Below are positions 9,622 through 60,553 of a stretch of DNA of 64,000 nucleotides, in pieces. Numbering within the stretch: the first letter of the stretch is position 1; every line of letters starts with the position of its first letter. The translations under genes were made by a program, and so were the position numbers. The stretch is from Oikopleura dioica. Its lineage: Eukaryota > Animalia > Chordata. Below the pieces are notes generated by a model, which worked only from the letters and a program-made list of their open reading frames with translations, ran no database searches and was not told the DNA's origin. The stretch lies in contig OU015566.1 in the NCBI GenBank assembly GCA_907165135.1, forward strand, positions 5,580,001-5,644,000, in the 5' to 3' direction.

Positions 9622-9787
9622 CTTTTTCAGGAGATGAATGAGAAATCTTGCTTACTTATCTAAACTGGTCAAAATATATACGGAAAAGCGCCAAAATAGT
9701 GGATGCAGGAAAAAGCAAGTTCGGGTGGCATAATCGGAGTCTCAAAAACAGAGGCGCCCAGCAGGGAGTCTCTCACTTTCCTGCAGC

Positions 9788-14881: not shown

Positions 14882-16086
14882 ACATGGGCGACCCTTTGTT
14901 ACTCGATAAAACGCTGGCGCTTTTGGGTTAGTTACTCAATAAAACGATGGCGCAGCAAAAAAAAATTTAATCGGTAAAACGATGGCACCCTTGTTAATCG
15001 AGGCGCGGGGCTCTCTTGCATGACGTCATCGGAGGACTCTTGCTGAAAAAAATAATGGAAAAGGGGAATCGAGCTCGCTCCCGCTACTCTCTAAGTGGTA
15101 TCACTAACCACTCAGCTAGACTAATTTGTTAGGAGACCCACATTTACAAGGGTTTATTGTTACATTTTCTCACATGGGAGCTGAAATGGTTCTCTCAGAA
15201 AATCATTGAATTGAGCTGAGCTGAGCAGGGCATTTCAGAAATCACTGACGTGAGCTTCTTGGCTCGGCAAACTGAGCTGTGCTGGGCTCGGCATCCTGAC
15301 CTGTCTAAAAACCTTAGACAGGACCTGTTTCCTGTTTTTTGGCCCTGTCCTGTGTAGCTGACCAAAATTGGGATTAAAATCTCGAAACCCTGTTTCTGTC
15401 CCTGTCCCTGACTAAAGACATGCCTGTTTTTCCTGCTCAGGGCCTGAGTTGAGACAGATTCCTGTGTAATTAGGTCAGGAAACAGGCTTCAATAGTCTAG
15501 ATTCACAAAGTAATTTAAAAGAAAAAACGCCAAAAACATAATTACATTATTTTAATGTAATGTTAATTTTGTATTTTAAACAGATCGTAGCGTTTTATAT
15601 TCAGGAACTTCATTAGAGATTCAGATTAAAGCGTCGAAATTGATGTTAAACCGGTTTACTTAACCAATTCTATTTTAATAAAGTGAAAGTGATGCTTGTA
15701 GGTTATTACTACTTACTTACTTTTAACCCATATGTTACGAAGTTACTTTTACTCATTATACCTTAAGATTTGAAGTCAAGAATCAATTGCCAAGAAAATC
15801 AATCAGCCCAATAGCCTATCTCCCCAAGAGCTGGGCTAGGAGCATTTCCGTGTATTCAAAGTGCATGTCTTCAACTTATCTATCTTCCAGCAAGAGAGTT
15901 CTCCGATGACGTCACGCCAGAGAGCCCCGCGCCTCGATTAACAAGGGTGCCATCGTTTTATCGATTAAATTTTTTTTCGCCACGCCATCGTTTTACCGAT
16001 TAACAGAGGGCCGCCCGCCACAATTTTATTGAGTAACTAGTTAAAAAGCGCCAGCGTTTTATCGAGTAACAAAGGGTCGCCCATGT
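14882..16086. mobile_element. Long-TIR non-autonomous DNA element (~170-200-bp arms) with TA or TTAA-like flanks
   Basis: ACATGGGCGACCCTTTGTTACTCGATAAAACGCTGGCGC... at the left and its reverse complement at the right; GAGCT- and CCTGT-rich fragments inside. Confidence 0.85.
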
Positions 16087-16496
16087 TAGCTTACAAGGAT
16101 TCCAAATCTTTTTTCAAATCTGAAATATCTCATCTTGAACACGAGATACGCAACATTCTATTGGCCCGCTAATGCACTAGCGCTCGATAGAAATGCACTA
16201 TTAGTAATAGTCTATTACTAATGGTCTATTAGAAAGGTCATTTTTTAATTTCCGATTTTATATATCAAACTATATACTGTATTTTCGTGAAAAAATCTCT
16301 ATTCGCTGACTTTCGCGGGTAACAAAAAAGGCTTGATTTTTGTTACCCGCTCCAAAGTTGCAAACAGTCAAAATGAAATCGCGGTATTTGCATTATTTCT
16401 CTTAGTTAAATATAAACCAGCGTTGATGGCTTCTTTTTTGCCCCTTTGTTCTTCCGCGCCGATATTCTTAGAATATAAAGAGAAAGACGTGGATAA

Positions 16497-17830
16497 ATGT
16501 CTGAAAAATCGTACTACAGCGAGAGTTTTCTATCAGAGGATTCAGTTGTTACGAACTCAGCTTTAGTTGGTGAGGAAATTTATGGTTTCGCTGATAATTT
16601 TTTTTTTGGTTTTAGAACAACTGAGATCTGAAATGAAAGCAGAATCAAATAGGGTCAACGAAGAAGTACGAAGGCTGAAGGTCTCACTTTCGGAAGCATT
16701 GATAGACAACGCTGATTATAAAAAACGGATCGCAGATTTTGAAAATACCGTCGATACCCAAGGGCTCAAGATAGACGAGTTAGAAAAAACTATTGAAGAG
16801 AAAATGTTAGAAACCGAGATGCAAAAACTGAATGTCAGAAATGAAATGAAAGTTTCCAAACCAGCTCAGATGCCTGCTTATAAGTTTTGCTTTTGCATCG
16901 TTTTCGCACTGGGTTTTTGGCTGATATTTAAACCCTTGGTCCTATATGAAAATTACGGCTTGCATGGAAAACAGCTTGAGATTCTTCAAGAATACGGGAA
17001 TGTTTTTAATTTAAAAATTATCATATTCTTTTTGTCTCCGAATTAATAATAATTATTATTCGAAAAACTAAGGAAGTTGTCTTGGCCACTCTACCGAGGA
17101 TGATGAGAGTGAATATCATGGTAGAAAAAATTTTACTGATAAATTGTCTTTTAATTTCAAACCAGCTCAGAAGCCTGTTTCTTTTCAAGAAAATTACGGC
17201 TTGCATGAAAACCAGCTTGAGAGTCTTCAAAAATACGGGAATGTTTTAATTTAAAAATATCATATAAGTTTGTCTCTCATAAATCATAATTTTTATTTTA
17301 AAAGCTAAGAAAGTTGTCTTGGCCACTTTACCGAGGATGATGAGAGTGAAACTCATGGTGGAAAGAAATATTTTGATAAAACGTCTTTTGCGCTCATGAT
17401 GAAAGCTTATAAAAATGGATTAAAAGAATTCACCCTCAAGGTTGGTCGAATAATAAATTTTATAATTGAAGATAAACAATTAAAAAGGTTGGAGCTTTAG
17501 ATAAAGACTTTTCTGTTGGAAAGTCTAAATTAAGTTACTCCAATGAAAAAATAGAACTACCGGGCGGTGATTTAAAATGGCGTCATCTTCTTTCTATCCT
17601 CCACGAAGGTAACTGTTACTAAGAATCTGCTTTATTTATATTCAGGGCGAAAAATTCGATTCAAAACGAGAATTCAAGTCATGGATGCTGTTGCGGGTTA
17701 CGAACGGAAAATATACGATTGGAAAGAAACAGATTCTGAAGGTGTTTACGAGCAGATTATTCTTGGGACGGATTGGCCTGAACGAGGAGGAGAATGGTAT
17801 CCAAGATATCATCTGACTTTTCTTGAATAA
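16497..17830 (+). CDS. Tandem-family copy D, with an in-frame internal duplication and a hydrophobic insert
   Basis: MSEKSYYSESFLSED start; exon2-end/intron/exon3-start duplicated in frame (~16960-17330); ends YPRYHLTFLE*. Confidence 0.75.
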
Positions 17831-18313
17831 AGATAAATCCTTATCAAAAATAAACATCAAAATTATTTCGCGCTGCGAGTCCCATTTTATCTGTTAAATA
17901 GCTATCAAAAGCTAAGAGCAGTTCAATGAGCAAACAAAGCGCAATAGATGAAGCTACCTTAACTCGCGTCCAAATCATCCCTTTCTTCTTTTCCCGCACG
18001 GAAACAGTGCGGTGCCAAACCAGAGTGTGTGCCTAAAAGTGCTCGAACTTGACGAATTGATTATTTTCGCACTTGGATGCGAGGACGAAAATCTGTCACA
18101 GGAGATAAATTAGGAATTTTGCTAACTTATCCTTACTGGTCAAAATGTATCTGGAAAAGGGCCAAAAATCAAGATGCAGGGAGGAGCAAAAAAGCAAGTT
18201 CTGGTGGCATAATCGGAATCTAAACTAGCAGGGGCGCGCAGCAGGAGTTCTCTCACTTTCCTACAGCGCTATAAATTGGCAAACAGCTGTTGCGACTCAT
18301 AATAACAATTTAA

Positions 18314-34808: not shown

Positions 34809-35354
34809 TCATACCTCTATAAAATGTGCGATGCATCGTTCTTGTTTGTCTTGCATCAATCCTTTCACATTCTTATCTTCACGTTTGTCATTATCTTCCT
34901 GAGGAATGAGCTGAGAGACCCCTCTTGAAGAGAGATCAAGACGTCTATGGTCCGATGGCGCCGTCGATTTTGATGATTCTGTAGGATTCAGACAATCTCT
35001 AGCAAAAATTCTTAATTGATGCAAATTCAGACCATCTAGATGCTCGGTAAGTCTCGCGATCGCACATTCGTATTCTAACATTTCGGTGTGAGTTCTGACA
35101 TTTTGTCCAAACGTGTTCATTGCATCTGATATGATTCTGTTTTTCAAATCTTCTGTTTCTTTTTCAATTTTTTCTTTTTGAAGTTCCAATTTATAATTGA
35201 TTTTATCAAGACTTATTGCAAGTTTCGCAAACGATGATTCTAGTTTTGCGATTTTGGCTGGATTACAGTCATTTTCTTTGGGTAAGGACAACAGATCTGA
35301 TCCAACCATATTAATTAAATCATGAGATTGATTTTGATTTTTGCGAGGCGACAC
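34809..35354 (-). CDS. Unknown coiled-coil protein; may have further exons
   Basis: 181-codon ORF with heptad-like LELQKEKIEKETEDLKNRI. Confidence 0.5.
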   Translation of the reverse strand: MSPRKNQNQSHDLINMVGSDLLSLPKENDCNPAKIAKLESSFAKLAISLDKINYKLELQKEKIEKETEDLKNRIISDAMNTFGQNVRTHTEMLEYECAIARLTEHLDGLNLHQLRIFARDCLNPTESSKSTAPSDHRRLDLSSRGVSQLIPQEDNDKREDKNVKGLMQDKQERCIAHFIEV

Positions 35355-35576: not shown

Positions 35577-36586
35577 TTAAATAATTGAACCAACTATCAT
35601 CATATGAAACAAATTTCGTGTTGCGTCTTCGTAGTTGTTCATTGAACTGGGCTTAGAATTCTCCGAATCAATTAGTTCGAGTGAGTAAGCCTTCGGTAAA
35701 AGATACCATTTTTCTTTCTCCATACAACCGAACTTTTCATTCACCATTTCCAATACACTGTCTTCATAGAAAAGAATTGCCTGTCCATTTTTGATGTTAT
35801 GATAATCATATTCGGCAGCTGATATATAATACGGATTCGTCAGCGGTATTCGAAGTATTGGTGGAGACTTATCCGAAAACTGGGTGTTTTGAATAACAAA
35901 CTCATCATTTTCGATTCGGTCGATTGTCATCTGGTGGAAATCCGGACCCTCGCTGTTCTTGCAAATAAATGCGCCTGTGACGGTTAGAGGTCTTATGAAT
36001 TTAAATTTTGGATGGAGAAAGCCTAAATTGAAAAATCAATTTTCAAACATCGATATTTCAAATTTTTACAAGAATATACATTTCTATACTCACATTTCGA
36101 ATAGATGCAAACTGAAGGAGGCATTGGATCAGGAAGAATATTTTCCAATCTACTGTTACACCCAAGCTCACGAATAATGTCCCAACCACTAGGCATAAGA
36201 TATGTTTTCATGCAGATTCGTTTTAAAAGAAGTTCAATATCAACTGTTTGATGTTCTATCTCTTCATTGCGATGATTGATGTTGAGTCCAGCTGTGCTTC
36301 TTGGATAGACGATCATAGTCAAAGTAAGGAGAATATTTTCAAACGAAACATCAACCTGATGCGACTCGGGTAAGTCATTTTTGATTGCGTGCATAAGAAG
36401 GACTGTTAATGAGACTGGTCCGCAAAGCTGAGATTCTTTCTGATTGAAAATTTCATTCGGCAAATTTTCCATATCAACTGCGACAAATTTCGTTATCTTC
36501 TTTTTCATTGTTGATGTTGTACAAGATTTTGTAATATTAACTTCTAGGGCGAAGTAATGTGAGTCATAATCATCTTCATCAAACAT
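35577..36586 (-). CDS. Papain-fold (clan CA-like) cysteine protease-like domain, two exons (36586-36094, 36022-35577)
   Basis: NQKESQLCG (Q six residues before C) and FHQMTIDRIENDEFVIQNT (H to N = 16 residues), the same spacing as papain Q19/C25 and H159/N175. Confidence 0.6.
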
Positions 36587-37279
36587 AAAAAAATTTTCTT
36601 TGAAAAGGAATTTTCATGACTGTAAAAAAATTTTGACGATTTCTCAAGCTAATGTTAATGATTATTCATAATTATTATTCATAAATTTGTCATTATAGAT
36701 TTCGACTTCAAATAAATCATAAAGTGAAAAGACCTAAGCTGGAAGAGTGACGATTTTTCTATCAAAGTCAGACGACTTGTCATAATCAAGGCCAAGACCG
36801 ATATGATTAAAAACGCCATCGATTGGAGTATTACGGAAAGCTTTATTTGGCCCGAGACATTCCTTTAAATATGGTTTAAATATTTTATGTATTCATTTAA
36901 TTCTTTTTTAATATTTCAATATAATATTTTTCCATAATATTTATGATATTTGTTATATATATAATATACATATAAAGTATATATATAAGGTCTCCACGCA
37001 AAAAAAATACTCAAACCGGGAGCAGTCTTTTGAATTTCAAAGTTTAAAAGCTCTTTTTGTAGCATTTGAGATGAGGAATCAGAATCTTCAATAAAAATGG
37101 TAGGTGCAAAAAGAAATTCTAGAGAAAATTTTGATTCTAGATATTTCCGGTCTGATTTCAATCGCGATTATCTCTTAAATTTCTTTTTGCATCTACGATT
37201 TTTATTGGAGATTTAAAATCAGCAGCTCAAGATCTACGCATATACACATATATATATGTGCGTATAAAGTTCAGTAGTT

Positions 37280-38936
37280 TCACTTCAACAGGCACTGAAG
37301 ATGGTATCAAACCGAAAACGTTCTGCCGAAATCTACTAATTAACTCATCAACATTTATCTGAAAGATGTCATTTACAAACTCATATCTAATATATATAAG
37401 AAATTCGTAAGGTTGTACGATACCTTTACAATTTTATCAATTTTATGCCATTCTATCTGGGTAACTGGTTTATATAAAAGTGTCCAAGCAGTCCACCAAT
37501 CACAAGATAAAAAGATCCAAAGTGAATGAAAAGCGAACATCCCTGTTGATATTTGCTGCTGAGCGGCAAAGCCAGGAGAACCAGCATCTTAGTTAAGTCA
37601 GATCCTAAGAGTTTCGAAATCAATTTTTACTTACATAAACGGGGCGACATTCTTTGCGAGCCGCGTCTTACATATCCCATTTGAAAAACTCCACGTCTTC
37701 CTGAAAGATCAGTAGTTAGTCCGAAGTCACAAAGTTTCGGAACACTGCCAAACATCAAAATATTTTCCATTTTCAGGTCGTAATGATAAATGGTTAGAGA
37801 CCGCAAATACTCAATTGCACTTGAAATCTCGATTGATATTTTTTGGCGAGCATGAACATCCAATTCCTCAACTATGCGTTCGCCATCATCATCATGCTCA
37901 TTGCCTTGTGGCTCAAGTTTTTCTCGAAGTGTTCCATCTGCTTTTTCCATTATAGTTATCCAGCCTACACAATCCTGCTGTATCTTATCAGAATCATGAT
38001 AAAGCTCGACATTGACAAAATTTTGAACAATATTATTGTGGAAAGGGATCTTGAGATCGTCATCTTTATCAATATACGCGTTTCCATTACGGTCATGGTT
38101 TATAGAAAACATCTTTATGAAGTTTTGAATGATACTTGAAGCAGCCTTAATTATTTTTTAAAACAATTTTTTACAATCAACAACTTAAATATTTTACATA
38201 ATAATTAAAATTGAGCATAATCATCTTCTTCCTTGTCTATTTGTATTTTAAAATTCTTAGGAATATTTAGCTCTTTCTTAATTATTCTTTTTGTAAAACC
38301 TCGCTTGTTTCTCATTACCATTTCATTTTTGACATCAAAGTTAATTTTTTCAGTAGCTTGCTCAAAGTCTACAAAAAAAATTAGAAATTTTAAAATACGA
38401 TTATTATTACCGCATGACAAATGAATTTCATGATGAGTCCTTTCATACGAGAATTTTTCTGTGAAAAGCAATGGATCAAAATTTTGAACACGTATTGCCA
38501 ACTCAAGTCCATCAAAATTTTCACCGAGGACTAATGCTTCCCCGCCTTCTCTTAAGACTGACAATTCTCGATTGTCAATTTTCCATGTTCCATATTCTTC
38601 TTCCATGTCCCAGCGATCGATGCGAATATTCACAAGATGAGGATTCTCCGCAAGAATATGTTTTTGAAATTTCGTAATCTCAACAACTGCGAGCTTTTTT
38701 TCATCGGCATCAAACAAATGCAATTTGTCTCCGGCAAAAATCATAAATCGCCACCTGTTAGCAATCAATATTGGTGCGGGAGAATACGGGGAAAAATCGT
38801 ATCTTTCGATTGACGAAATAACCTGGCATTTTGGAGTTTTCGTGGACTCTCTCTTCAGCTTTGGTATATTTTCTGCCAGCCATCGTCTTACTCGGTTTCT
38901 GCTTAGTTCTTGTGGGAAATTTTCTTGAAGTGACAT
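37280..38936 (-). CDS. Divergent non-RD protein kinase, multi-exon
   Basis: LREGGEALV Gly-loop-like motif, AIRV (R at the VAIK lysine), FHNNIV, ITIMEKADG hinge, HYDLKMENIL, CDFG, YAGSPGFAA. Confidence 0.8.
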
Positions 38937-39586: not shown

Positions 39587-41824
39587 ATGAGAGAATTTGG
39601 TCCCGCAACATTATTTTTCGGTGCCTTTTTTAGGATTTCTAATGCTCAATTTGAAACACTAGATTTTCTCTTTGACCTCAATGAGAAACGGCCAGAGTTT
39701 TCTCCAGCTGATAGAATCGAGCTCAATCTCGACGAAGGGACCCTTATCGGCTACGAGACGACCTCACAAGTTTTGCGAGGCACAAAATACCAGTTTTTCA
39801 AGCAGATTCCTTATGCAAAGTCTCCCGAGGGCTCCCGCCGTTTTCGAAAGCCAGAGCCGATCGAGCAATTCGAAGGAGGAGTTTACGATTCTGTTTCCCC
39901 AGGAAAAGCAATAAACGCCTGCCCTGGGTACTCTTTTGGGCCTGATGCGCTTTTACCCGCGCTAGAAGATGGCGTCATTACCGAAAACTGTCTTGCCATG
40001 GACATTTATCGCCCGGCGAGGACTAACAAAACAGATCTTCCAATTTTTATCTGGATTCACGGAGGAGGTCTCTTTTCCGGAACATCAGCGTACTATCACT
40101 TCGCCCGGTTGGCGCAAGAAGACATCATCATTGCAGCGATTCAATACAGACTCGGTATTCATGGCTTTCTCAGCTCTTACAGTCCTGATGGACTGACGGA
40201 TACTCCTGGTAATTTCGGACTCTTGGATCAGCAAGCAGCGATTGAGTTTGTTCACCGAAACGCTAGAAACCTCGGAGGCGATCCGAATAAAATAACCATC
40301 GGTGGGGAGTCTGCTGGCGCCTGGTCCGTAGGGTTCCAGTTGCTAAGTGACAAATCAGCGGGTATGATCAAAACTGCTATTTCTCAATCTGGCTTGGCAA
40401 CCTTTGACATGTCCCCACAAGAGTCAGAATATGGAAATATGGCGATAAAGAACCTCTGCGAGAAAACAAGCTCGATGATTGACTCTCCCTTGAACTGCTC
40501 AGAAAGCACTGAAGAAATTGTTGATCAATTCCGTGGCTTGAACACGACTGAAATTCTGAAGCTTCAATTAGCGGACCAAGCATGTTTGTTGGAATTTCCG
40601 AATCATCCGGATTGGGCACCAGTTGCTTTCGATGGAGAGTTCTTTACGGAAAACGCGAAGAAAAAACTCGAAGAAGGAAGAGTAGCAGAAAACGTCAATT
40701 ATGTGATTGGAGCAAATTCGTTTGAAGGAAGCTTGATTTGGTACATTCTCTTGGGTTACTATGGAGATGCTGCCGTCACTACATATGCTTAGGGATCCTC
40801 GAACTCGGATAACTTTCTAAATATTTTTTATATTACCACTCATTCGATTGACATTAGTTGAATCCTTATGAAGATGATCGACTGAAAGTCTTCGACAATC
40901 TTGCTGGCTACAACCTCGCTAATGATGAAATAACAACAAGCAAACGCGTGAGATTTATCCCAGAAGAAGACCGAGAAGAAGTCTTTGAAAACTATTTCAG
41001 GAAATTGATATTTACTAAAAACTAACTGTCAGTTTTGACCGTTTTCATATCGTATGAACAGACTCATGAGCGACGAACCGTGGTTGAACTGTGATGACAT
41101 CAAAAACTGCACCGCTCAAGAGTACCAGATTTTAGCTGCAAAGATCATGGGTGAAATGGCCTTTGTTCTTCCATCTTTTGAGCATGCTCTTCTTTACTCT
41201 GACCAATCCGCAGAAGTTTCAGTTTATTATCTGAATGTCGATATGCTCTACGATGCGTTTATTTAGGGTTTCCAATCGATTAAAAATCATTAAGTCTATC
41301 AGTTGAAAACCGATCAAAGGGAGACATCATTTCCCATTCCAGCAGCTGGCCATGCTGAAGACCTCATGTTCATGATGGATGTTCCAAATATGGAGGTAGA
41401 ATATGATGAAGGAAGCGTTAATTTGACTCTCTGGGAAATTCTTCACAGCCCTTCCGAAAATCCATATCCGCCAAAAGAATATATGATTCAAATGGCAGAC
41501 ATCTTCATCAACCATTGGGCTTCTATCATCAAGGTTTGAAATCAATCTTTGGAGGGAGCTCTAGAATTCTCTGTTTCGCTAAATTTGTATTCTCAGAGCG
41601 GAAAACCCGAATCGTCTTGGAATCAGTTCACCCGCGAAAACATGAATTATGTTGAATGGACCAACAACGACACCCATGCTCTGGAAGTCATGCACTCTGG
41701 CCTTCCACCAACAATCAAATATATGATTGAAACTTATGGTCCTCAAGAGACGAGTTCGGCCTTCCCTGTATCCAACTGTATCCTGCTAGTTTTACTAACC
41801 CTGACTCTTTCCATAACTTTCTAA
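39587..41824 (+). CDS. Type-B carboxylesterase/cholinesterase-like protein, secreted and probably GPI-anchored
   Basis: Signal peptide; ENCL, WIHGGG, YRLG, GNFGLLDQ, GESAG (Ser), NSFEG (Glu), GHAEDL (His); hydrophobic C-terminus CILLVLLTLTLSITF*. Confidence 0.92.
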
Positions 41825-48115: not shown

Positions 48116-51100
48116 TCATCCAGCAATGGTTATTTTGTGTAGCATCACGTGAGTTCTTGAAGGAATTGCTAGCCTCAGCGCTTTTACAAGTTTTTTGCTC
48201 GGATTGAGTCGTTGAAGATCGCAAAGAAGCTTTCCTTTTTCTTAAAAGTGTCATTCAACTAGAGTTTTTTGGCTGCCGGGGGATTTACCTGAACGGGGGT
48301 TTGACCTGGCAGGTAAATCCGACGCTCAGGTCAAAACCCCGTTAGGCAAATCTGACGCCAGGAAAATTCCCCGTTTTGATCAAAGTTTCATTGGGGTGGT
48401 GTCTGGAGTCGACAAAAAATCCCGACAAAAAATTTTGTCGAAATACCATAAAAAATTTCCAAATCGGGCTTCGGCTGTCGACCAGAAAATTTCGACAATT
48501 TTTTTCCGCGAAACAAAAATGAAACACAAACTGATCCCTCTTTAACCCAGTCAATCAAAAATGAAAGGGATCACAAAATGAAAATTTTGCGATTTTTCCT
48601 GTCGAAATTCCATAAAAAATTTTCAAATCGGGCTTGCGCTGTCGAAATTTTTTTGTCGATTCCAGACACCACCCCGTTTCATTCATTCTTAAAAATGATT
48701 TTAATAACAATAATTATATTCAAAATCTATCAAAAATCAAATTTTTGCCGATTTTCTAGTTTAGGATTTCTAGTTTTATGACACAGTTTAAGAAAGCCAC
48801 GTAGCTGAGCATAATTTGAACACTGTATCAAGGGGTCTGGGTCGTGCCCGAAAGGCGATTCATGGGACCGGAAGTTCCGAAATGGGTACCAGAACTCTTC
48901 ATTTGAGTCATCGGTAGGCTTGAAAAAATGCTAGTAAAATACTACTGACCTGCCATCTAGTGCCAAGGGTTAGGGTTAGGGCTAGAATAGTGAAAGGGGG
49001 CGCAAGAATGGCACACTCCACTTTGTGTCGGGGTCAAAACTTCGCACCTGGAAAGAACGAGCAGGATCTCCTGCCGAGCAAATAAGATGCAAGGGTCCGC
49101 CGACATGTGCTAACTCCTGCAGAGACTGCTCTCAGCGCAAAATCGGAGCTGCACTCGGCACGAGATGTATGAGCCATTGTCAATGGTCCATTGAGTAAAT
49201 ATGATCACAGGACAGATTGAGCTCAAGATTAGGATCAATCTCAGTCGCGGATAAGCTTCAAATATGAAAAAATTGAAGACTCAAAAATAAAAATTGGTCA
49301 ATTCTTGCCTCAAGGGGTAATCGAGGGCGTAGATTCCGATTTCGGCGTCAAAACTGACTTCAAAAGATCCCCACCACGGTTTTGGACGAAATGGTCCTCG
49401 CACGGACCAAAATTGTTAAAACCAGGGTTAAGGGTATCAAGTAAATATTTTTTAATTAATCTTACCCTACCGAATTGTCATTTTTAGCCGACCCGCAAAA
49501 ACACCTCAGGAACCCTCACCCTAACCCTAACCAAGAGTAGTCGAAGTGTAATCTAAAGATAGCTAAGCGATAGATATCTACAGTTTTATTTCTTTTTTCA
49601 AAACTTCAAGGCATTTCTGCGCGAAAGCTAATTTTTCGACTCTCGTGAGGTGTAAAATAACTAGGATGGCCACACAAAAAAATCTTATTATTCGTATCCT
49701 TAATCTTATCCTTATTTCGCCAATCGTAAGCTAAAAATTAGGCAAGATTTGTCCAACTTATATTTTTTCGCATTATTGTCAATAATTTATCGAGACTTAT
49801 ACGCGGCTGAGCTTGATCCTGATCTTGGACTCAATATGCCCTGTGATCATACACTGTACTTACTCAATGGCTCACACATCTCATGCCGAGTGCAGCTCTG
49901 ATTTTGCGCTTAGGGCAGTCTCTGCAGGAGTTAGCACATGTCGGCGGACCCTTGCATCCTATTTGCTCGGCTGGAGATCCTGCCCGTTCTTTCCAGGTGC
50001 GAAGTTTTGACCCCGACACAAATCTTCGTTTCAACCGGACGGTTTGGTCACTCCTGAGGTTTACACCGTTTTAGTTCACGAAATCCCATTTCCGGGACAA
50101 AATTAGACTTTCTAGCGACCCAAGCGGCCACTGTGATGCAGGTCAGCAGCATTTTATAAATCCATTGACGTGTTCTTGAGTCCATTTCGGAACTTCCGGT
50201 CCAATAAATTGCCTTGCATGAGACTCCTTCATATTGTGCCAAAATGAAAGCTCAACTTCTTAGCTTTCTAAAGCTGTATCATAAGACCCCTAAGCATCGC
50301 TAGAAAAATCGATTATCTAACAACCCTAAAATAATTAATTTTCTAAATAATTAATTGAATCAAAGTCAAGTTGAAGCGTTACATTTTTTCGTTAGAAAAA
50401 CGGCGCTTTTACCTGAACGGGGATTTGACCTGAGCGTTGAATTTACCTGTCAGGTCAAACCCCCGTTTAGGTAAATCCGACGCCAGGTCAAACCCCCGTT
50501 CAGGTAAATCCGCCGGCAGCCGAGTTTTTTTGTATAAAAATACCTTGTTTATCATGAAAACAAGCTTTTCCCGGCGGATTATTTGTCCAACTGGTCTGTT
50601 CGCTTGAGGTTATCATGTCAATTTTAATATCAGCTGGAATAATCTGATGAAAATCAATGGTTCCAGAGGTAATAACGAGATTTTGCGGGGACTGAAGATG
50701 GCTGAAGTGAAATTCTATCGTGGTGTCTTTTTGAGAAGCTTGGAGAAAAAGACCTCTCTTCCCATAATAAAATTCGAGAACATCCTTTTTGTTCAAGTTA
50801 GTCACAATTTTTCCCGCCTCAATCGTCGGATTCAAGTCGCCCAAGTGCGAAATTTTCCCCTGAAGGGATGAAACGCGCCCCACGTGATGAAGAAAGTTCT
50901 TTCCGTGAACTGGAACTGCAACTTTGTCCACAAGCGATTTGCATCTCTCCGCGTCGTATGAGGGCAGACAAGCTTTCATTTTCACGAACGCCCAGTAGAT
51001 CACGTCGATTGGTTTGATTCGATAGAAAAGCTTCGTATAAGTGATGAGATCATGAAGACTAGTTTTTCTGAAGAGCTTTCCAATAAAGCCCATTTCGGAG

Positions 51101-51734
51101 AACTCAAGTGAGACCCAATCTGGGTCGTCTTTTCTCTGCTGGATTTGCATCATCAGAAATTGGAAGAATCCACGGTCGATGACCAGATCATCCTCAAGCT
51201 GAAGAAAGTAGTCGTACTCGAGGCCAATGTTCCACATGAAAAGATAGTCCAGGCATTGCCGGGTTCTCCAGACGATGCGATCGTCTGAATCTCCCCAGTT
51301 GTGCTTGATGTCGACAAGATCGGATCCGTAGTAGTCAGAGGGAGCAACCACGATCTTTGTTGTTTCCGATTCGTATTTATCCACGAGCTCGGCATAGTAC
51401 TCTTCATCATTGGCTACAGAATAAGTAAAACTTGTTTTCATATTGGGAGTACCTCCGACATAAAGTAGAACTTTGATGTCAATAACGTTTGAAAAATTTT
51501 CTGTAAAGTGATTAAGGTCATTCAGTAAATACTGCATTGTATCGCTGAGATATTCTTCTCCGTGTCTCTTGATTGTTGGAATCCCGATCAGCAACGTTGG
51601 GACTTCAAGTTCTTCCGAAGAGACGTTTGAATCTTCTGGCAGCAAGGGCCCATGCTTGTTATTTAACAATTTTATCAGCAAGAAAGCTGCGAAAATTCCG
51701 ACAAGAAAAACCCTCGAGTAATCGAAGATTTAAG
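48116..51734 (-). CDS. MGAT4: MGAT4-like GlcNAc-transferase (GT54), paralog 2
   Basis: TM VFLVGIFAAFLL, IGIPTIKR, WRTRQCLDY, FLQLEDD, LEFSEMGFIGKLF, KPIDV, HVGRVSSLQGK; last exon 48240-48116 (EKGKLLCDL...HVMLHKITIAG*) follows a 2303-nt intron. Confidence 0.88.
48271..50521. mobile_element. Mutator-like non-autonomous element filling the last intron of MGAT4 paralog 2
   Basis: TIR GGCTGCCGG.GGATTTACCTGAACGGGGGTTTGACC; perfect 9-bp TSD GAGTTTTTT; inner inverted-repeat pairs ~48750/50310 and 49022/50022. Confidence 0.88.
48393..48675. mobile_element. Nested MITE of the GGGGTGG-TIR family
   Basis: TIR GGGGTGGTGTCTGGA(G/A)TCGACAAAAAA. Confidence 0.8.
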
Positions 51735-53608: not shown

Positions 53609-56600
53609 TCATGATGGCGGCGGGGCATTGGCTACTCCTGCAGAACCCTAGTAAATCAACGGTAAATGAGCGAAAAAGGCGATATTCGAACCTGTGTCAG
53701 ATAACCAGCATGGGCGGTACCGGATTGAATCGCCAGAACTGGCCTGTCTTCAATAAATAAGTCGTGTCTCTGGGAAGAATAGGATTTCCAGATTTCAGAC
53801 TCGTCGAGGATTTCAGCGACCTAAATTTCTTTCTTTCTCTGGTTCAACTTTTCATTTTACCTGCGGCCCATATTCAGGACATTCCATGAAGGCCTTCAAA
53901 ATCTTGACAATCTGCGCTTTTGACGACTTATTCACGCGATTCAGAGACAATTCCTAAAGCGACTGTAAATTTAGAAAATTATCGAAAAGGTAACCTCGAG
54001 GAGAGCTTTGACGAACTCGCCATCGTTTGAGATCGCCTGGGCTGTAAGGTTTGAATTACTGTGGTTCGTAGCTCGGAATATCGTTTCGAACGCTATCATC
54101 GCCATTTGATCGTCAATAAGACATCGCTAGAATCACATTACCATCTAATCAATTTGCCATGGCTACCTTGAGAGCTCTGAGCGAGCCTTGAATCTCGCCG
54201 ATTTGTCCAACGCAACTTGATTCCATGCACAAAGCGTTGAGTAAAAGAAGAATAGGTCTTAAATATTGCGTTTCTCCGAGTCGCTTTATCAAAGTCGGTA
54301 GAATTCCCATGCCAGGAACTACAAAAATCATCAGCAAAAGCGATCAAGAGTAAGGCCCTACCGAGTTTTGAAAGATTAATTTGAGTAGTGAAAAGACCGC
54401 AGCCAGCTTCGGAAAGTTGATCGAGCTCGTTTTGATCGACATTTCCGTTCGTTGGTTCTGTCAGATCCGTGATTCTGTCGAACAGCTGCGTGATGAATTC
54501 TTTCGGCCTTCTCAACTGCCAACCAGGGTTTTGAAGCAGGAGTCGGATATAAACACCACCAAGGATAAACTCCTTGTTTGGAAGGAACGATTCAGTTGGG
54601 GGTTTCCAGTCGATCTCGGGGTTCTTTGCTTGTTGCTGCGAAAGATCTCTGGCACTGCGTTCCAAATAAAGAGAAGTCTGCTGACGGGTCTCTTCGCTCC
54701 AGATCAATTCGGGGTTTTCGTGAATTCCTTCGTAAAGCGCTACCGAGGCTTCGGCATTGTCGGCCATGGCATCGGCAAAAATTGGTGGAAGAAGCTTTGA
54801 AAGAGAAATTCGAACGCGCGGGCCGGATAGTCGATCAGATATTGCCTGATTAAAATTGATAACAAGAATAATTTTAGTCGAATTCAAACCTTAGCGAGCA
54901 AAGCAGCAGCTTCTTTCCTCACAGCTGGCTCGGTGCTATTCGCAAACAAGTTTGTCGTGTACAAAACACCTCCAGTTGGAATAAATTGTTTCACTATTTC
55001 TGGATGTGAGCTCAGCGCGCTCAGGACTTGAAGGAAGAATTGGTGCTCTTGAGCAGTCAACCTTTCGACAACGAGCAAAATTGAGCTGAGAAGACGTTGT
55101 TGCGCGATAGCAAGGACGACTTCTTGGACCGAAGCGACGATTCCGAAAATTCGAAGGGTGTTCAGCTGGATCTCGCTTGTCGTGTGATCGTTAACGAAGA
55201 AGCTGCTGAGGAGACGGAGGCTGTTTACGCATTGCAAGGAATAGGGCTGATTCGCGGAGAGAACATGGAAGACTGAGCTCAGGGCCATTGAGGTTTGATT
55301 AAGTCGAGTTGGATCAACAGTTCCGTCGACTCCGATCGAGGCGAAATATTGAGCTTGATTACCAAGATAGTCAAGAAGCGATTTCAGATAGCCCTCGGGA
55401 TCAGGAAGTTGGAATTGCGGCTGTTCGTTGAAAACGCGGACGAAAACGCCTTTTTGAAAATAGAAATTATTCTTTTCTAATGAGAAACTTACCATGAACA
55501 ATGAGCTCTTCTGAATGTGCTGAGATCTTGAAATTCGCCATCCTCGATAAATCAACTTCGCTTGCATCTCTCAGTGCTGTTTCCCGCTCTTTCTCCAAAA
55601 AGTCCGCGAGTTCGTTTCTCGCCATTCCTTCCCAAATAAGAAGCGGTGTTTCTGAGTTCGTTGTGAACAGCTTCAACATCAGCGCGAGATCTCCTTGCTC
55701 CATTAGACTGACGAGGTAGGAAGTCATGCAGCAATCCAGGCAGCGGCGGATATCCGCGTCTGTTTTTAGAGTTGGCAAAAGACCGGCGAGGACGATGATC
55801 GCATGGAGAGCTTGCTTTGCAAGTTTGTTTTTCTGCTCTTGTTTGTTGCTCTCCATGTCTTTTTCGATCCCGGCTTCTTCTAACGTGTAGTCGTATTCGA
55901 ACAGATACTCCATCAAAATCGGTAGCACGCCTTGATTGATCATCGATTTACGAAGCTCTGGAATCATTCCAAACGCAGCTACAGCTTCTACAGCCGCAAG
56001 TTGAAGTTGTACAAGGTGTGAGCAGAGAAGCCTGATGATATCTTCCAATAAGCTCTCTGGTTCTTCCGTCAGGCTTGCAACGCAAGATGGGAATTGCGCA
56101 GACATCGTCAGTGTCCTGCAGACAAAGAGACAGACCTTTGCGTCCAAGTCAGTGGCTTCGGAAGATTTTGAAAGGGTTCCCATGCAACGATTGAGCGATC
56201 TTCGCAACTCAAACAAGCCCTTTTCCCGATTCAACTCTTCAGCATTCAATGCCGAGCAGCAAACGGTGTAATACGCTAGCTCGACCGAAGGCGATAGAAG
56301 TTCCGCATCTACCTTTGAATAAAGCTGTTCGTCGTCAGTTTCAGACTTGACAGTTTCAACCAGCATCGGATAGCCGGCGTACTTGTACGGCTCGAGCTCA
56401 GAGCGATAGTTTTCGAACAGAATGGCTTGGGCCTTGATGAGTAAGCGGATGTTGACAGGGTTAGGCCCGTCGACTTCATCTGATTTGGCAGCAAGTTGCT
56501 CGTACGCTTGGTTCACTGCTTGGAACATTTCCTTGCCCTCTGGATTTTTATCCGGATGGTACTTTTGTGCCATTTTGAAATAGGCCTTTCGCACTTTTGG

Positions 56601-59600
56601 TTCCGAAAACGGCCCAGCAGCAGGGTCAAGTCCTAAAGTTCGCAGAGCATCATCTTCTGACAGTCCACCAGGTTCCTTGTTCAACTCGGCTCGCCAGTTA
56701 TTAAGGGTGTCTTTCAATAAACGCACAGGGTCGCGAATCGGCCACTTTGGAAATTTTTGTGTGTTCGTAAGATGGCGCAGGTAGTAATAGCCACAGAAGA
56801 GTTCTTTCTCTAAGCTTGGGTAGATAATTTGAGGAAGTGGAATGTATTGGTAAATGGCACGGGTATTGGCGCGCAGTCGGGGCGAAAAATCTGCCACATG
56901 CGCCGCTATCTTTTCGATCGCTAGAAAAATGATTAGTTTTAAAATTTATGAAGAAATTCTACCTTGGCGTCTCATTTCAGAGTTCCAAATAGCTTCAGGT
57001 GTGTCGAACTCGCCAAGGAAAATTTCAGAGAACTTCTCGACCGAATGGTTTTCAAGATAGTGGATCATCGCTTCAGGAAGAATTTGACCGAGGATGGAGC
57101 GGGACTTCAACGAGTTGGACATGATTTCTTCTGATTTGAAACTTTGCAAGAGATGGGTCATTTTGAGGAAGACTGCGATTGGAAGAACGTTGTTGCCAGT
57201 GTACATGATGATGAAGTAGAAAACGCCGGTGAGGTACAATCGGGGCATGAGAGGCGAGTCGACCAAGATAAGCGGTAGCAGCTTGGCTACTTTTTCAACC
57301 AAAGTGACGTCGAATGTCAAGAGGAGTTGGACAAGGTGTGGCAAAGCGTCGGACATGCAAAGAAGCTGCTTGACTCGTGGTGGTGGACGAATAAGTTGCC
57401 CATTCGTGCCTCGCGCCGGATATTGCTCGCACATTTTTGTGAAAATGTTCAAAATCGTCGCGCTGAGCTCCGATTCCGACAAGATCGGCTCGCCCTCGCC
57501 CAAGAGCGTCCATTTTAGCTGAGGGACCTCAACGAAGCATCTCCAGCCGTCCATGCCTTGTGCCCAAACTTTGGTTCGTTCAGTAATGTCGCCTTCTTCA
57601 TAAAGTCGTTTCATCTCGCTCGAGCTAATGGGCCCTGTTCGATCCTTTTCTGCAGTTGAACCCTTGGCCGACCCGTAGTACCACTCTTTTTCCTCCAGTT
57701 CTGCTTCGAGCTCTTCACCAGCGATGATGGCATTCCGCTGAAGCACAGTCGTCTTTGGCCTGTTTTTCTGCAAGTGAGCGAGCGTTACCAAATCTATCAG
57801 CAGTTTTACTCCACCAGCGTTAATCACTAGCTTCACATTATCCCGATAGAGCATCAGTTTTTCAATGAACATGACGAATCGATCTCGTTCCGCTTTATTC
57901 TTCGTTGTCTCCAAAAGCTTGACAATGTAACCAGCATCTTCGAACAGGCCGATTTCTTCATAACAGCGCTCGTATACGATCGCCATTGCGTGAAGGCACT
58001 GTACTTTCATACTCGAAGAAGTGGTGAGCAAAAACCGGTGATAAAGCTGGGAGAAGAACGCTGGAGACTGATGGATAGTAAGTCCGGATTGTTTGCCATC
58101 CATGTCCAGTAAAACACGGAGGTAGTAATCGCCGACCTTGACCTCTGAAGCTAGCGAGTTGAACATCACCTCAAACTCGGCATAATTCCAAGCTGCGTCT
58201 TCGTTACCGATAACTGCCACGGCGTCTGTAAAGGTTCTGATTTCGTTCTCAAGTGTCACTCGTAGTTCTTCTCGTGTTTTGTAGTTCCAAATTAAATCGG
58301 GCTTTTGATGATCTTTGTAACACTGATAATAAAGCAAGTTCCAGTTCTCCTTGATTTTCGTATTTTCACGGCGGCGGCGGAGGACGATCGGTTTCGGTTG
58401 TGATGCTTGTACTTCTTCGGGCGGCTTGGATCTGTTTTGGATACCTCGCCAGTGAGCTAGAAGCGCTTTTGTCTGTTTTTCACGGCTCTTTCGACCTCCA
58501 AAAGTTGTGTTTCAACCGCCGAGATTTCACTCATTTTTGTCGCAACTTTCAAATTGTCTCGATCGAGCATTTCACCTTCATCAGTCAAAACGACGGACTC
58601 GCTTGATTCCAGACAGCGTAGAAGGCCGGCTGGGAGAATTTGTCTAAGAAGCTTTTGCGTTGGCCCAAAGTTCGTCGCCCAAAGAGCGATTAAACGTCGA
58701 GAAAGACCTCGATTAGCAGCGGCACGAGTCCCAACAGAAAAGAGCGCAGAATGAGTGTGGATCAAAAACGCGCCTTCATCGATCGCAAGAGTTTGCAAGT
58801 TCTTGACGACTTCTGGAGACCCCTCTTCAATCATCGCTTGCATCAGGAGACCAGCTGACTTTTGAATAGCCAAACTTGGGTGTTGAAAGAGCTTGAAGAA
58901 CGATCTGCCCAAGCCGGCGATGGAAGTGAGCATCCAGTCGAAATTCTCGCCCGCTGTCGTTTCAGAAAAGGGAGGGCAAATGACGAATGTGAATAAATCC
59001 AGCAAAGCAGAAATGATCAAAGCGCCAGAGTTTTTGTCACAATGAGATTTCAACTTCCCGAGAAGGAGTTCCAGAAACTTTTGCGAAGACAACAAGGAGA
59101 TTTTGTTCAACTGTTCTTGTCGCAAATCAGCATTGTCATGCATCGGGCACATAAGTGCAGCAAGAGAATCAACAGCTGCACAAAGGACAGCATCATCATC
59201 TGCTTTTAGCGCTTCCACAACACCGGCTCCGAGGGAATCTCTAAAACGCGCGAGTGTTGTGAACGCAGAGAAACCAGCTTTTGAGCTGACCAATCTTCTC
59301 AAAGCGAAAAACTTGGCTTCTGGGTCCTTTACTTTCGCGGAGAGAAGGGCAGAAATCGCCATTTCGATTAGTTTTTCTTTATTTTGCGCAAAGAGACGCT
59401 CTTGACTAACGGCAAAGGCCAATCCGGATGCTGAAACATTCGCGTTGAATCTCAGGACTGCATCGTCTACGTCGTTGCCTCCTGTTCCGAGGAATTTGAG
59501 AAGAAGGGTTTCAATATCTTCATCAGGGCCAGCATAGAGAGGTGCCCATCGCATGTGTGGATCTCCTGGCGAGCTTTTGACGCAAACATCGCGATTTCCA

Positions 59601-60553
59601 GATCCACGGACAGAGTCCAACAACGTTGCTAGAAGAGAATCACGCTCGGGAGAAAGATAACAGTTTTGTCTTCTATTGTCGAACTCGATGATAAACTGTT
59701 GGGGATTTGCTTTCGATCTGGCAATTCCAGCGATGCGCTGAAGTGAGCGAAGAGAAGCAATAGAATAAGTGGCTGGATCTCGCTCGATAAGGCAGTTTTC
59801 CGTGAGGCAGAGAGCGCGACGCGTGCTTGGACGACCATCCGGCCGGGTTTTTGTTACGTTGAACTCAACGTATGAAGTAAGAGCTTCATCAGTCGAGAAG
59901 TCGCCCATTCGTCGCGAATGAAAGTCGACAGATGAGATTCCTGGCTTTATTCTTTTCAAGCCGATGCAGAGATTTGCCGCTGCTGCTTCTTGACAAGCTT
60001 GGATAATTTCATTCCTTTGATTCGAGCCAAGAAGGTAGAGCCGTTTGTGCTCTTCGTAAACAACCACGAAGCCGCCATTGACATCGGTGACTTCTGTGAA
60101 TCCTTGTATTAGGCGATAGTCGAATCGGTGCTTGATCTGTCCTGTTTTGAGAACGACGTACATACTGGCAGGGCCAACGATGACTGTACAATGGTCAACG
60201 CTCTCGTCCCACTTGTGCTTCACAGCGTTGAATCTCGCCACATTTGCGAGACCGGCCATTTTCTCATAAAACTGCATCGCCTCTGTCATCAACTCGTCTC
60301 GATGCTCAGTCGAGAACTTCATCGTCTCCACTTTTCCCTTTTTCTTGATGTGGATAAGGAACTCGCTTTGGGAGCGCGACTTTGAATCGAGACTGATTGT
60401 ATTGAGCTCGTCCCATCCCCAAGCGTTCGTATCTTCATGTGGGGCGGATGGGTTGAAAGTTTTCAAACCTTTCTTGGTAATCGCAAAGAGCCGCTTGTAT
60501 TTGCCACGCCAGCTGTGCTTCGTGACATAATAAACAGCCTGTGTTTCACTCAT
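53609..60553 (-). CDS. DNAJC13: RME-8 / DNAJC13 endosomal J-domain protein
   Basis: YYVTKHSWRGKYKR start, IWN repeats, GYF-like WAQGMDGW, J-domain with HPD (KYHPDKNPEG), QRHDLFI end; one frame break at ~58467-58480. Confidence 0.97.

What the first reader, a model, noticed from the sequence alone, without database searches (positions are those of the whole stretch)
35577..38936. Candidate kinase-papain-protease fusion (non-RD kinase followed by an intact Cys-His-Asn domain)
Seen in sequence: a divergent kinase (HYDLKMEN, DFG, Arg at the beta-3 Lys position) is followed on the same strand by NQKESQLCG and FHQM...VIQNT. Q-to-C is 6 residues and H-to-N is 16. Established: these are the papain Q19/C25 and H159/N175 spacings, and non-RD kinases are enriched in innate-immune signalling. 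No signal peptide or propeptide is visible, so the protease would be cytosolic. Inference: a single phosphorylation-coupled protease module of a kind I cannot match to a named animal family. The frame across ~37280-36600 could not be joined by hand, so two adjacent genes or a decayed copy remain possible.
Basis: partly seen in the sequence, partly recalled or inferred. Interest (0 to 1): 0.8.

Follow-up and report, generated by a model that had tools for sequence, protein, structure and literature searches.

The report
Interrupted kinase–papain-fold peptidase gene copy
This is a divergent copy of an unstudied gene family, named so far only from the tunicate Oikopleura dioica, whose single protein joins an odd kinase-like domain to a papain-type cysteine peptidase. 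In this copy about 0.72 kb of non-coding DNA splits the two halves, so a fused protein from this locus is not shown.

Summary

- **Family.** The locus belongs to a real family. Public sequences hold at least 57 cluster representatives, and 29 retrieved proteins carry both halves. All named ones are Oikopleura dioica "unnamed protein products".
- **Fusion in relatives.** In three independent loci the linker and the peptidase N-half lie in one exon or one unbroken ORF.
- **Peptidase fold.** No Pfam model or PDB sequence profile recognises this domain. An AlphaFold model of a relative aligns only to clan CA (papain-like) cysteine peptidases: all 50 top hits, Z up to 9.8. Gln, Cys, His and Asn sit where papain has them.
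- **Kinase half.** It keeps the catalytic-loop Asp, Lys and Asn and the DFG motif. It has Arg at the beta-3 Lys position in 35 of 35 family members, so it may be a pseudokinase.
- **This copy.** The ancestral linker exon is interrupted by about 724 nt (37295-36572). That stretch carries a stop (TGA 37229-37227), an AATAAA signal and a 180-nt hairpin. Only weak or non-canonical splice pairs restore the frame.
- **Expression.** Not tested.

The scan has already noted this family many times on other DNA of the same genome. The family is interesting; this copy adds a probably disabled member.

The parts
38411..38936 (-). Exon 1: start codon, about 125-aa N-terminal region and the kinase N-lobe (EGGEALV 38549-38529; AIRV with Arg at the beta-3 Lys position 38498-38487)
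   Evidence: It aligns to family members at 37-44% identity. The donor G|GTAATA is followed by a 42-nt intron (38410-38369). Removing that intron matches the length of relatives (HLSC-DFEQ versus HLLS-DFQA).
38319..38368 (-). Exon 2, a mini-exon (D)FEQATEKINFDVKNEM
   Evidence: Homologous to DFQAATDSTQKDNA in P0003 and DFENIKLCQY in L003.
37635..38049 (-). Exon 3: kinase hinge, catalytic loop HYDLKMEN (37785-37762), DFG (37728-37720) and the start of the activation segment. An alternative in-frame acceptor at 38145 would add 32 residues.
   Evidence: Pfam Pkinase 2.9e-10, 40.4 bits. Homology starts near 38067. Splice sites are listed.
37424..37587 (-). Exon 4: GSPGFAAQQ (in place of APE), CDWW, and the end of the kinase C-lobe (…IDKIVK)
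   Evidence: 47-nt intron with T|GTAAGT…ctaAG. Matches positions 1-30 of the linker profile at E 1.8e-11. 48-56% identity to family members.
37296..37358 (-). Exon 5a: start of the linker (INVDEL…GLIPSS). As assembled, the frame runs on to TGA 37229-37227.
   Evidence: It begins right after the conserved phase-0 intron, as in L001 and L003. The likeness to CNVQ.L…ISLPxSS is seen by eye only; the profile match is not significant.
36572..37295 (-). Interruption of the ancestral linker exon (about 724 nt): stop TGA 37229-37227, AATAAA 37196-37191, a hairpin, the strong acceptor-like tttttttacAG at 36631-36621, and an in-frame TGA at 36616-36614
   Evidence: Stops in all frames. No family homology inside it. 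Relatives are continuous here. Places 36946-36990 were not analysed.
37059..37237 (.). Imperfect palindrome (hairpin) inside the interruption: 78-nt arms, 76% complementary, 23-nt loop
   Evidence: The RNA fold is -55.4 kcal/mol, z = -6.5 against shuffles.
36094..36571 (-). Exon 5b: conserved linker end (SHYFALEVNITKS 36562-36524) and peptidase N-half with Gln/Cys (NQKESQLCG 36445-36419), YPRS 36307-36296 and SGWDIIR 36190-36170. The ORF is open from 36613; the first ATG is at 36586.
   Evidence: E 1.5e-32 to relatives. Linker profile positions 60-113 at E 1.4e-18. 47 of 60 family-conserved positions are identical.
35577..36022 (-). Exon 6: peptidase C-half with His (FHQM 35939-35928), Asn (VIQNT 35897-35883) and WYLLP 35708-35694, then stop TAA 35579-35577
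   Evidence: 71-nt intron with T|GTGAGT…tttAG; the junction codon is TGC. 43-49% identity to relatives. 14 of 15 family-conserved positions are identical.

Best explanation
The locus is a divergent copy of a lineage-restricted gene family. Named members come only from Oikopleura dioica; the rest are unnamed marine metagenome fragments.

**Ancestral product (one cytosolic polypeptide).**
- An N-terminal region of about 125-150 aa.
- A kinase-fold domain. It is non-RD (H-Y/F/C-D). The catalytic Asp, Lys and Asn and the DFG motif are kept. Arg is invariant at the beta-3 Lys position, and Gln replaces the APE Glu.
- A conserved linker of about 60 aa, predicted to be disordered.
- A very divergent clan CA (papain-fold) cysteine peptidase with Gln-x5-Cys … His-x15-Asn.

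**Inferred working of intact members.** The peptidase half is a Cys-His-Asn peptidase or isopeptidase. The nucleotide-binding kinase or pseudokinase half tethers and gates it.

**This copy.** The single exon that in relatives runs from the linker into the peptidase has been interrupted by about 724 nt of unrelated DNA that holds a 180-nt hairpin. As assembled, the kinase frame ends at TGA 37229-37227, followed by AATAAA. The peptidase frame restarts after an in-frame TGA.

**Most likely reading.** This is a recently interrupted copy that no longer makes the fused protein by ordinary splicing. Both halves are still undecayed.
For: **Family membership.**
- The peptidase exon finds 57 representatives.
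- The word searches returned 40 (P0010) and 44 (P0003) proteins; every one that carries a name is Oikopleura dioica, the rest are unnamed ENA/JGI entries.
- 29 of these carry both the H.D.K..N–DFG motif and the Q-x5-C–YPRS motif at constant spacing.

**Fusion in relatives, independent of gene models.**
- L002 has one unbroken ORF from the activation segment to the stop plus AATAAA.
- L001 exon 8595-9128 and L003 ORF 4719-5225 cross the junction.

**Peptidase fold.**
- The model of P0105:380-707 has pLDDT 73.6 and pTM 0.71.
- All top-50 VIA hits are clan CA peptidases: xylellain Z 9.8, Der f 1 9.4, cathepsin B 9.1, PCAT1 8.9, ComA 8.6. Most alignments start at residues 88-91, around the conserved Gln.
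- Cys97 opens helix 97-113. His239 lies in strand 235-247. Asn255 follows strand 250-254.

**Conservation across the family.**
- Peptidase: Gln 41/43, Cys 39/41, His 31/34, Asn 27/30.
- Kinase: Arg 35/35, Asp 40/40, Asn 40/40, DFG Asp 39/39.

**This copy.**
- It keeps 156 of 196 family-conserved positions: 81% in the peptidase half and 73% in the kinase half.
- The interruption has stops in all frames, no homology inside it and a hairpin at z -6.5.
- Only weak GT, GC or GA donors paired with AAG-type acceptors keep the frame.
Against:
- O. dioica tolerates GA-AG and other non-canonical introns, above all in new introns (PMC4122922). Eleven in-frame G*-AG joins exist.
- This gene's own well-supported acceptors include weak AAG types.
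- Both halves are free of frameshifts and stops and keep all catalytic residues. That fits continued selection as well as a recent break.
- Catalytic geometry was judged from secondary structure and alignment ranges of a relative's model, not from distances. This copy's own joined domain was not folded.
- No enzyme activity of any family member is known.
Confidence: 0.55

Rival explanations
1. The copy is functional and still fused. The roughly 640-730-nt interruption is a newly gained long intron, possibly seeded by a hairpin or foldback element. It would be removed through non-canonical or weak sites, so the locus makes the full kinase-peptidase protein.
For: - In-frame joins exist. One is the donor C|GTAGAT (37237) with the acceptor ttttcaaAG (36598). 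Another is a GA-AG pair that uses the GA of the TGA stop (37228) with the acceptor at 36574.
- About 12% of O. dioica introns are GA-AG, and these are 3-fold enriched among new introns.
- The gene's other acceptors are equally weak: ctaAG, and either ttaAG or tcaAG.
- Both halves are intact, and the peptidase half keeps 81% of conserved positions.
Against: - The best splice-like sites near the edges are out of phase. The donors TCA|GTGCCT and GAA|GTGAAA are phase 0, and the strong acceptor tttttttacAG leads into stops in all three phases.
- About a third of random donor-acceptor pairs are in phase, so the 11 joins carry no weight.
- Every join that keeps the GLIPSS stretch adds 12-35 non-homologous residues, partly encoded by TA-rich simple sequence.
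- Only 2.4% of O. dioica introns are long.
- Every relative examined lacks an intron here.
Confidence: 0.28
2. The insertion split the fused gene into two adjacent functional genes. One is a kinase-only gene ending at TGA 37229-37227 with AATAAA. The other is a peptidase-only gene starting at ATG 36586, possibly the second cistron of an operon with spliced-leader trans-splicing at 36621.
For: - A stop codon is followed 31 nt later by AATAAA.
- A strong acceptor-like tttttttacAG lies 35 nt upstream of the first ATG of the peptidase ORF.
- 27% of O. dioica genes lie in operons that use trans-splicing.
- The peptidase half is well conserved.
Against: - An mRNA starting at that acceptor would first meet an out-of-frame ATG that opens a 13-codon upstream ORF overlapping ATG 36586. 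That ATG itself sits in a poor context, preceded by a run of T (read).
- No stand-alone peptidase or kinase version was identified among the relatives. Shorter database entries begin inside the kinase C-lobe or are single exons.
- The gap of about 570 nt between AATAAA and the acceptor is, from my own knowledge, long for an operon.
Confidence: 0.12
3. The second half is not a peptidase at all. The Gln/Cys and His/Asn spacings would be chance matches in a non-enzymatic domain.
For: - No Pfam or PDB sequence match.
- Foldseek gave no hit below E 0.088.
- One annotated relative (P0003) has Ser at the Cys position.
- A few relatives have Thr or Ile at the Asn position.
Against: - All 50 best structural matches among 48,161 chains are papain-fold cysteine peptidases, across eight or more families.
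- The atlas shape search returns C39 and C1 clusters.
- The four residues are conserved in 90% or more of members.
- They sit on the canonical secondary-structure elements.
Confidence: 0.04

Closest known systems
Unnamed Oikopleura dioica proteins, e.g. CBY13560.1 (E4XV29), CBY31701.1 (E4Y7V1), CBY31442.1 (E4Y742), annotated 'Protein kinase domain-containing protein' or 'Uncharacterized protein'
   Same: Same domain order, same motifs (EGGEA, A-V/I-R, H.D.K..N, DFG, PGF..Q.Q, CDW, Q-x5-C, YPRS.AGLNLNP, SGW.IIR, FHQM.LDRIEN..QN, WYLLP.AYS) and shared intron positions.
   Different: Only 40-57% identical to any of them. It sits on a long branch with unnamed metagenome sequences. Its linker exon is interrupted, while theirs is continuous.
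Peptidase family C39 (double-glycine bacteriocin-processing domains of ABC transporters: PCAT1, ComA)
   Same: Compact papain fold (Z 8.6-8.9, rmsd about 3.2 Å over 126-128 residues). From my own knowledge, C39 has a Gln six residues before the nucleophile Cys and a His followed about 16 residues later by an acidic or amide residue, and the peptidase is fused to an ATP-binding module.
   Different: C39 is bacterial. There is no sequence-level match. The third catalytic residue is Asp there and Asn here. This family has an extra helical insert and sits C-terminal to a kinase fold, not N-terminal to a transporter.
Papain family C1 (papain, cathepsin B, Der f 1, xylellain)
   Same: Best structural scores (Z 9.0-9.8 over 151-167 residues). 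The Gln19/Cys25 and His159/Asn175 spacings are identical (established knowledge).
   Different: PF00112 does not match. There is no signal peptide or propeptide, whereas from my own knowledge C1 enzymes are secreted or lysosomal zymogens. Sequence identity to the C1 hits is 7-14%.
Cytosolic clan CA isopeptidases (UfSP1/2, ATG4, ZUFSP/Mug105)
   Same: Cytosolic papain-fold enzymes without a propeptide. Z 6.2-7.8.
   Different: Lower structural scores than C1 and C39. No sequence match. No ubiquitin-like-binding features were tested.
KSR-type pseudokinases and non-RD kinases
   Same: Arg replaces the beta-3 Lys, as in mammalian KSR1/2 (from my own knowledge). The HRD Arg is absent, as in non-RD kinases.
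   Different: Only generic protein-kinase similarity: B-Raf, DAPK1, CDK9 and TTK at E about 1e-7 over the catalytic loop, and IRAK4, CDK and CDPK by fold at E about 4e-6. No orthology to any named kinase family.

Membership tests
Oikopleura kinase-like / papain-fold peptidase fusion family (unnamed) | Kinase-like half with Arg at the beta-3 Lys position, H.D.K..N, DFG, PGF..Q.Q and CDW | tested here: met
   This copy has AIRV, HYDLKMEN, CDFG, GSPGFAAQQQ and CDWW. Family column counts are; coordinates are.
Oikopleura kinase-like / papain-fold peptidase fusion family (unnamed) | Peptidase half with Q-x5-C, YPRS.AGLN.N, SGW.IIR, FHQM..DRIEN…QN and WYLLP.AYS | tested here: met
   All are present in this copy. 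E 1.5e-32 to relatives.
Oikopleura kinase-like / papain-fold peptidase fusion family (unnamed) | Both halves encoded as one polypeptide, with the linker and the peptidase N-half in one exon | tested here: not met
   As assembled, about 724 nt with stops in all frames separate GLIPSS (37296) from D(Y)DSHYF (36571). Relatives are continuous.
Clan CA (papain-like fold) cysteine peptidases | Papain-like fold: nucleophile Cys at the N-terminus of a helix, His and Asn/Asp on adjacent strands of the beta domain, and an oxyanion Gln upstream | tested here: met
   Tested on the model of relative P0105:380-707, not on this copy. All top-50 structural hits are clan CA, Z up to 9.8. Cys97 opens helix 97-113, His239 lies in strand 235-247, Asn255 follows strand 250-254, and Gln91 is upstream. 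This copy keeps all four residues.
Clan CA (papain-like fold) cysteine peptidases | Cys, His and Asn within bonding distance; catalytic activity | not testable with these tools
   The tools return no model coordinates, and no biochemistry is available.
Peptidase C1 (papain family proper) | Match to PF00112, plus a signal peptide and an inhibitory propeptide | tested here: not met
   No PF00112 hit in this copy or in 50 relatives, even at E ≤ 10. The N-terminus is hydrophilic, and the domain lies C-terminal to a kinase.
Peptidase C39 | Match to PF03412 or PF13529 | tested here: not met
   No hit. The similarity is by fold only.
Eukaryotic protein kinase superfamily (PF00069) | Pfam Pkinase match above the gathering score | tested here: met
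   40.4 bits against a cut-off of 31.7 for exon 3. The fold model of a relative matches protein kinases at E about 4e-6.
Eukaryotic protein kinase superfamily (PF00069) | Full catalytic set: beta-3 Lys, HRD Arg and Asp, catalytic Asn, DFG Asp, APE Glu | tested here: not met
   The beta-3 Lys is Arg (35/35 in the family). HRD reads HYD. The APE Glu is Gln (40/41). The catalytic Asp, Lys and Asn and the DFG motif are kept. The domain is therefore an atypical kinase or a pseudokinase.

The most novel reading that the evidence does not exclude
The 0.72-kb interruption is a very young intron created inside a formerly continuous exon, perhaps by a hairpin-forming element, and removed through Oikopleura's permissive GA-AG or weak-site splicing. 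The locus would then still make a fused protein. The family would be a new class of cytosolic enzyme in which a kinase or pseudokinase domain gates a novel clan CA peptidase, for example in a fast-evolving defence or self/non-self system.
Probability: 0.25. Interest if true: 0.7.

Novelty: new variant of a known kind. Interest (0 to 1): 0.45.

Why it matters
- I know of no other case where a protein-kinase fold is covalently joined to a papain-fold peptidase. That rests on my own knowledge and on two blank literature searches.
- The peptidase half would be a new clan CA family that sequence methods cannot see.
- The family has expanded to dozens of copies. Named members come only from Oikopleura dioica, a fast-evolving chordate, which suggests a lineage-specific and possibly conflict-driven function.
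- An intact member is a tractable target for structure and activity work.
- This locus adds a divergent subfamily member and a dated-looking event. A continuous exon has been broken by a hairpin-bearing insert while both halves remain intact. RNA data would decide between intron birth, gene fission and gene death.

Tried and rejected
- **Word-index protein search** with the peptidase exon found nothing. Its length window cannot see the full-length relatives, and the exhaustive search then found 57.
- **ESM Atlas feature search** gave only weak leads at or below 0.83. Several were cysteine-peptidase clusters.
- **Read laying.** There is therefore no expression or splicing evidence.
- **Foldseek against the PDB** with the peptidase model gave no hit below E 0.088. 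The exhaustive VIA search was needed.
- **PDB sequence profile and Pfam** on 50 members gave no peptidase family.
- **Search for a near-identical ortholog or allele in metagenome contigs** found none.
- **Exact look-ups** of this copy's ORFs and of a neighbouring gene's ORF were not on record. The species was therefore not established independently.
- **Transposon hallmarks.** The edges of the interruption show no terminal inverted repeat or target-site duplication above shuffled controls. No second copy was found in the window or in L001 and L002.
- **Missing linker piece.** No other segment of the interruption matches linker profile positions 31-59.
- **Literature.** No paper holds 'Oikopleura', 'kinase' and 'cysteine peptidase' together. 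The three 'Oikopleura' plus 'kinome' papers concern CDK1 or Fam20.
- **Joined spliced protein of this copy.** I did not build it or send it to any tool. Exons were searched apart by reference, and a relative with a naturally continuous domain was folded instead.
Full report
**Observation.**
On the minus strand, open frames carry the reported motifs.
- The start is ATG 38936-38934 and the stop is TAA 35579-35577.
- Kinase motifs: EGGEALV 38549-38529, AIRV 38498-38487, HYDLKMEN 37785-37762, DFG 37728-37720, GSPGFAAQQ 37582-37556.
- Peptidase motifs: NQKESQLCG 36445-36419, FHQM 35939-35928, VIQNT 35897-35883.
- The first Gln lies six residues before the Cys, and the His lies sixteen before the Asn.
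- Pfam recognises only the kinase part (Pkinase 40.4 bits against a cut-off of 31.7).
- No copy of either half lies elsewhere in the window.

**Gene model (supported by homology).**

| Element | Coordinates | Note |
|---|---|---|
| Exon 1 | 38936-38411 | start codon, N-terminal region, kinase N-lobe |
| Intron | 38410-38369 | 42 nt |
| Exon 2 | 38368-38319 | mini-exon |
| Exon 3 | 38049-37635 | an in-frame alternative acceptor at 38145 would add 32 residues that relatives lack |
| Intron | 37634-37588 | 47 nt |
| Exon 4 | 37587-37424 | end of kinase C-lobe |
| Intron | 37423-37359 | 65 nt |
| Exon 5a | from 37358 | start of linker |
| Exon 5b | to 36094 | linker end and peptidase N-half |
| Intron | 36093-36023 | 71 nt, junction codon TGC |
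| Exon 6 | 36022-35577 | peptidase C-half and stop |

The very short introns match the published O. dioica peak of 47 bp (PMC4122922). Exons were searched apart, by reference.

**Family.**
- The exhaustive HMMER search with the peptidase exon found 57 representatives, 37 of them at E ≤ 1e-10.
- The named ones are Oikopleura dioica 'unnamed protein products' such as CBY13560.1, CBY31701.1 and CBY31442.1.
- Word searches with two relatives returned 40 and 44 proteins. Those of 560-795 aa are all O. dioica; the rest include unnamed ENA and JGI marine fragments.
- Twenty-nine retrieved proteins carry the kinase catalytic loop with DFG and also the peptidase Q-x5-C…YPRS motif, at constant spacing.
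- This copy is only 40-57% identical to any of them. It sits on a long branch with unnamed metagenome sequences.
- It keeps 156 of 196 positions that are at least 85% conserved in the family: 73% in the kinase half and 81% in the peptidase half.
- The scan had already noted this family many times on other DNA of this genome. I used those notes only as leads and re-derived the points above.

**Is the fusion real?**
In relatives it is, and this does not depend on gene prediction.
- Metagenome contig L002 has one unbroken ORF. It runs from the kinase activation segment through CDW, the linker and the whole peptidase to a stop followed by AATAAA.
- In L001, the locus of CBY13560.1, one exon (8595-9128) runs from the first linker residue into the peptidase. 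It follows an intron at the same place as this copy's 65-nt intron.
- In L003, the closest relative at 53% identity, ORF 4719-5225 does the same.

**This copy's junction.**
- A profile of the family linker (115 positions) matches exon 4 over positions 1-30 (E 1.8e-11). It matches the peptidase ORF from SHYF onward over positions 60-113 (E 1.4e-18).
- Positions 31-59 have no significant match anywhere in 37430-36540.
- By eye, INVDEL…GLIPSS (37358-37296) corresponds to CNVQ.L…ISLPxSS and sits exactly after the conserved intron.
- About 724 nt lie between 37295 and 36572, with stops in every frame.
- As assembled, the upstream frame ends at TGA 37229-37227, with AATAAA at 37196-37191. An in-frame TGA (36616-36614) precedes the peptidase ORF, whose first ATG is at 36586.
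- The insert contains a 78-nt-arm hairpin (37059-37237; z -6.5).
- It shows no terminal repeats or target duplication at its edges and no second copy in the window or in L001 and L002.
- I enumerated all G-N donors and AG acceptors. Eleven joins keep the frame, all with weak sites. One uses the GA of the stop codon as a GA-AG donor.
- The strongest sites are out of phase. The strong acceptor-like tttttttacAG (36631-36621) leads into stops in all phases.
- O. dioica does use GA-AG introns (about 12%, enriched in new introns) and operons with trans-splicing. A new intron or a gene fission therefore cannot be excluded.
- RNA could not be consulted. 

**Peptidase fold.**
This copy's domain is split by an intron, so I folded a relative's continuous domain (P0105:380-707). 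The family alignment used for it included this copy's two exons as separate rows.
- The model has pLDDT 73.6 and pTM 0.71. The core from residue 95 onward is confident.
- Foldseek found nothing below E 0.088.
- The exhaustive VIA search against 48,161 chains returned only papain-fold cysteine peptidases in its top 50:

| Hit | Z |
|---|---|
| xylellain | 9.8 |
| calotropain, Der f 1 | 9.4 |
| cathepsin B | 9.1 |
| PCAT1 | 8.9 |
| ComA | 8.6 |
| staphopain | 8.0 |
| UfSP | 7.7-7.8 |
| ATG4 | 7.3 |
| ZUFSP | 6.3-6.7 |

- Most alignments begin at model residues 88-91, around the conserved Gln91. In ComA, PCAT1, cathepsin B and Der f 1 the chain ranges begin at or next to the residue I recall as the oxyanion Gln (my own knowledge).
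- Cys97 is the first residue of helix 97-113. His239 lies in strand 235-247, and Asn255 follows the next strand.
- The atlas shape search gave C39 and C1 clusters.
- The tools return no coordinates, so I could not measure Cys-His-Asn distances.
- By sequence the domain matches no Pfam family in any of 50 members and no PDB chain.

**Kinase half.**
- The family profile matches many protein kinases only over the alpha-E–catalytic loop–DFG stretch, at E about 1e-7.
- The full-length model of P0105 (pLDDT 79, pTM 0.81) matches protein kinases generically: IRAK4, CDKs and CDPK1 at E about 4e-6.
- Across the family, the beta-3 position is Arg in 35/35. The catalytic Asp, Lys and Asn are 40/40, and the DFG Asp is 39/39. 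The HRD Arg is absent, and the APE Glu is Gln in 40/41.
- The domain is therefore under constraint but is either an atypical kinase or a nucleotide-binding pseudokinase.
- The high pTM hints that the domains pack together. The conserved linker is predicted to be disordered.

**Verdict.**
At family level the architecture is real, and I found no description of it in the literature. At this locus the two halves are separated by an insertion into a formerly continuous exon. My estimates:
- About 55%: a recently interrupted copy that no longer makes the fused protein by ordinary splicing.
- About 28%: still fused through a new non-canonical intron.
- About 12%: split into two genes.
- The remainder: chance motifs or an assembly error.

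**Context.**
A carboxylesterase gene lies head-to-head at 39587. An MGAT4-like gene lies at about 50.5-51.7 kb, and an RME-8/DNAJC13 gene at 54-60.5 kb. These are ordinary host genes.

Noticed in passing
window 8075-18270 (+): A tandemly repeated block. Two 173-aa ORFs (8346-8867 and 12517-13038), which look like coiled coils, are 99% identical. The surrounding DNA repeats at 78-93% identity with a spacing of about 4.17 kb. Pfam gives no match.
   Followed up: partly
window 37059-37237: A 180-nt imperfect palindrome (78-nt arms, 76% complementary; RNA fold z -6.5) inside the interruption of the linker exon. It could be a foldback or MITE-like element. No second copy was found in the window.
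   Followed up: partly
window 34809-35354 (-): A 181-aa open frame rich in charged, heptad-like sequence starts about 220 nt downstream of the peptidase stop, on the same strand. It may be the next gene of a dense cluster or an operon. Pfam gives no match.
   Followed up: no
window 39587-40792 (+): A carboxylesterase family gene (PF00135, E 7.9e-71) lies head-to-head with the kinase-peptidase gene. The two start codons are about 650 nt apart.
   Followed up: partly
window 54138-60553 (-): An RME-8/DNAJC13 gene in a few very long exons (RME-8_N E 4e-231, DnaJ, GYF_2), in a stretch of higher G+C (46-48%). An MGAT4-like ORF lies at 50500-51681 (-).
   Followed up: partly
P0003 (CBY13560.1), residue in the motif DQKWSNLSVP: This annotated O. 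dioica relative has Ser at the position of the nucleophile Cys. Some family members may therefore be inactive or serine-type variants. A few others have Thr or Ile at the Asn position.
   Followed up: no
L001:3984-7804: In the locus of CBY13560.1, the intron that corresponds to this copy's 42-nt intron is about 3.8 kb long. Family introns can therefore grow by large insertions.
   Followed up: no
It is a short TA-rich stretch inside the interruption. It was left out of all later analyses.
   Followed up: no
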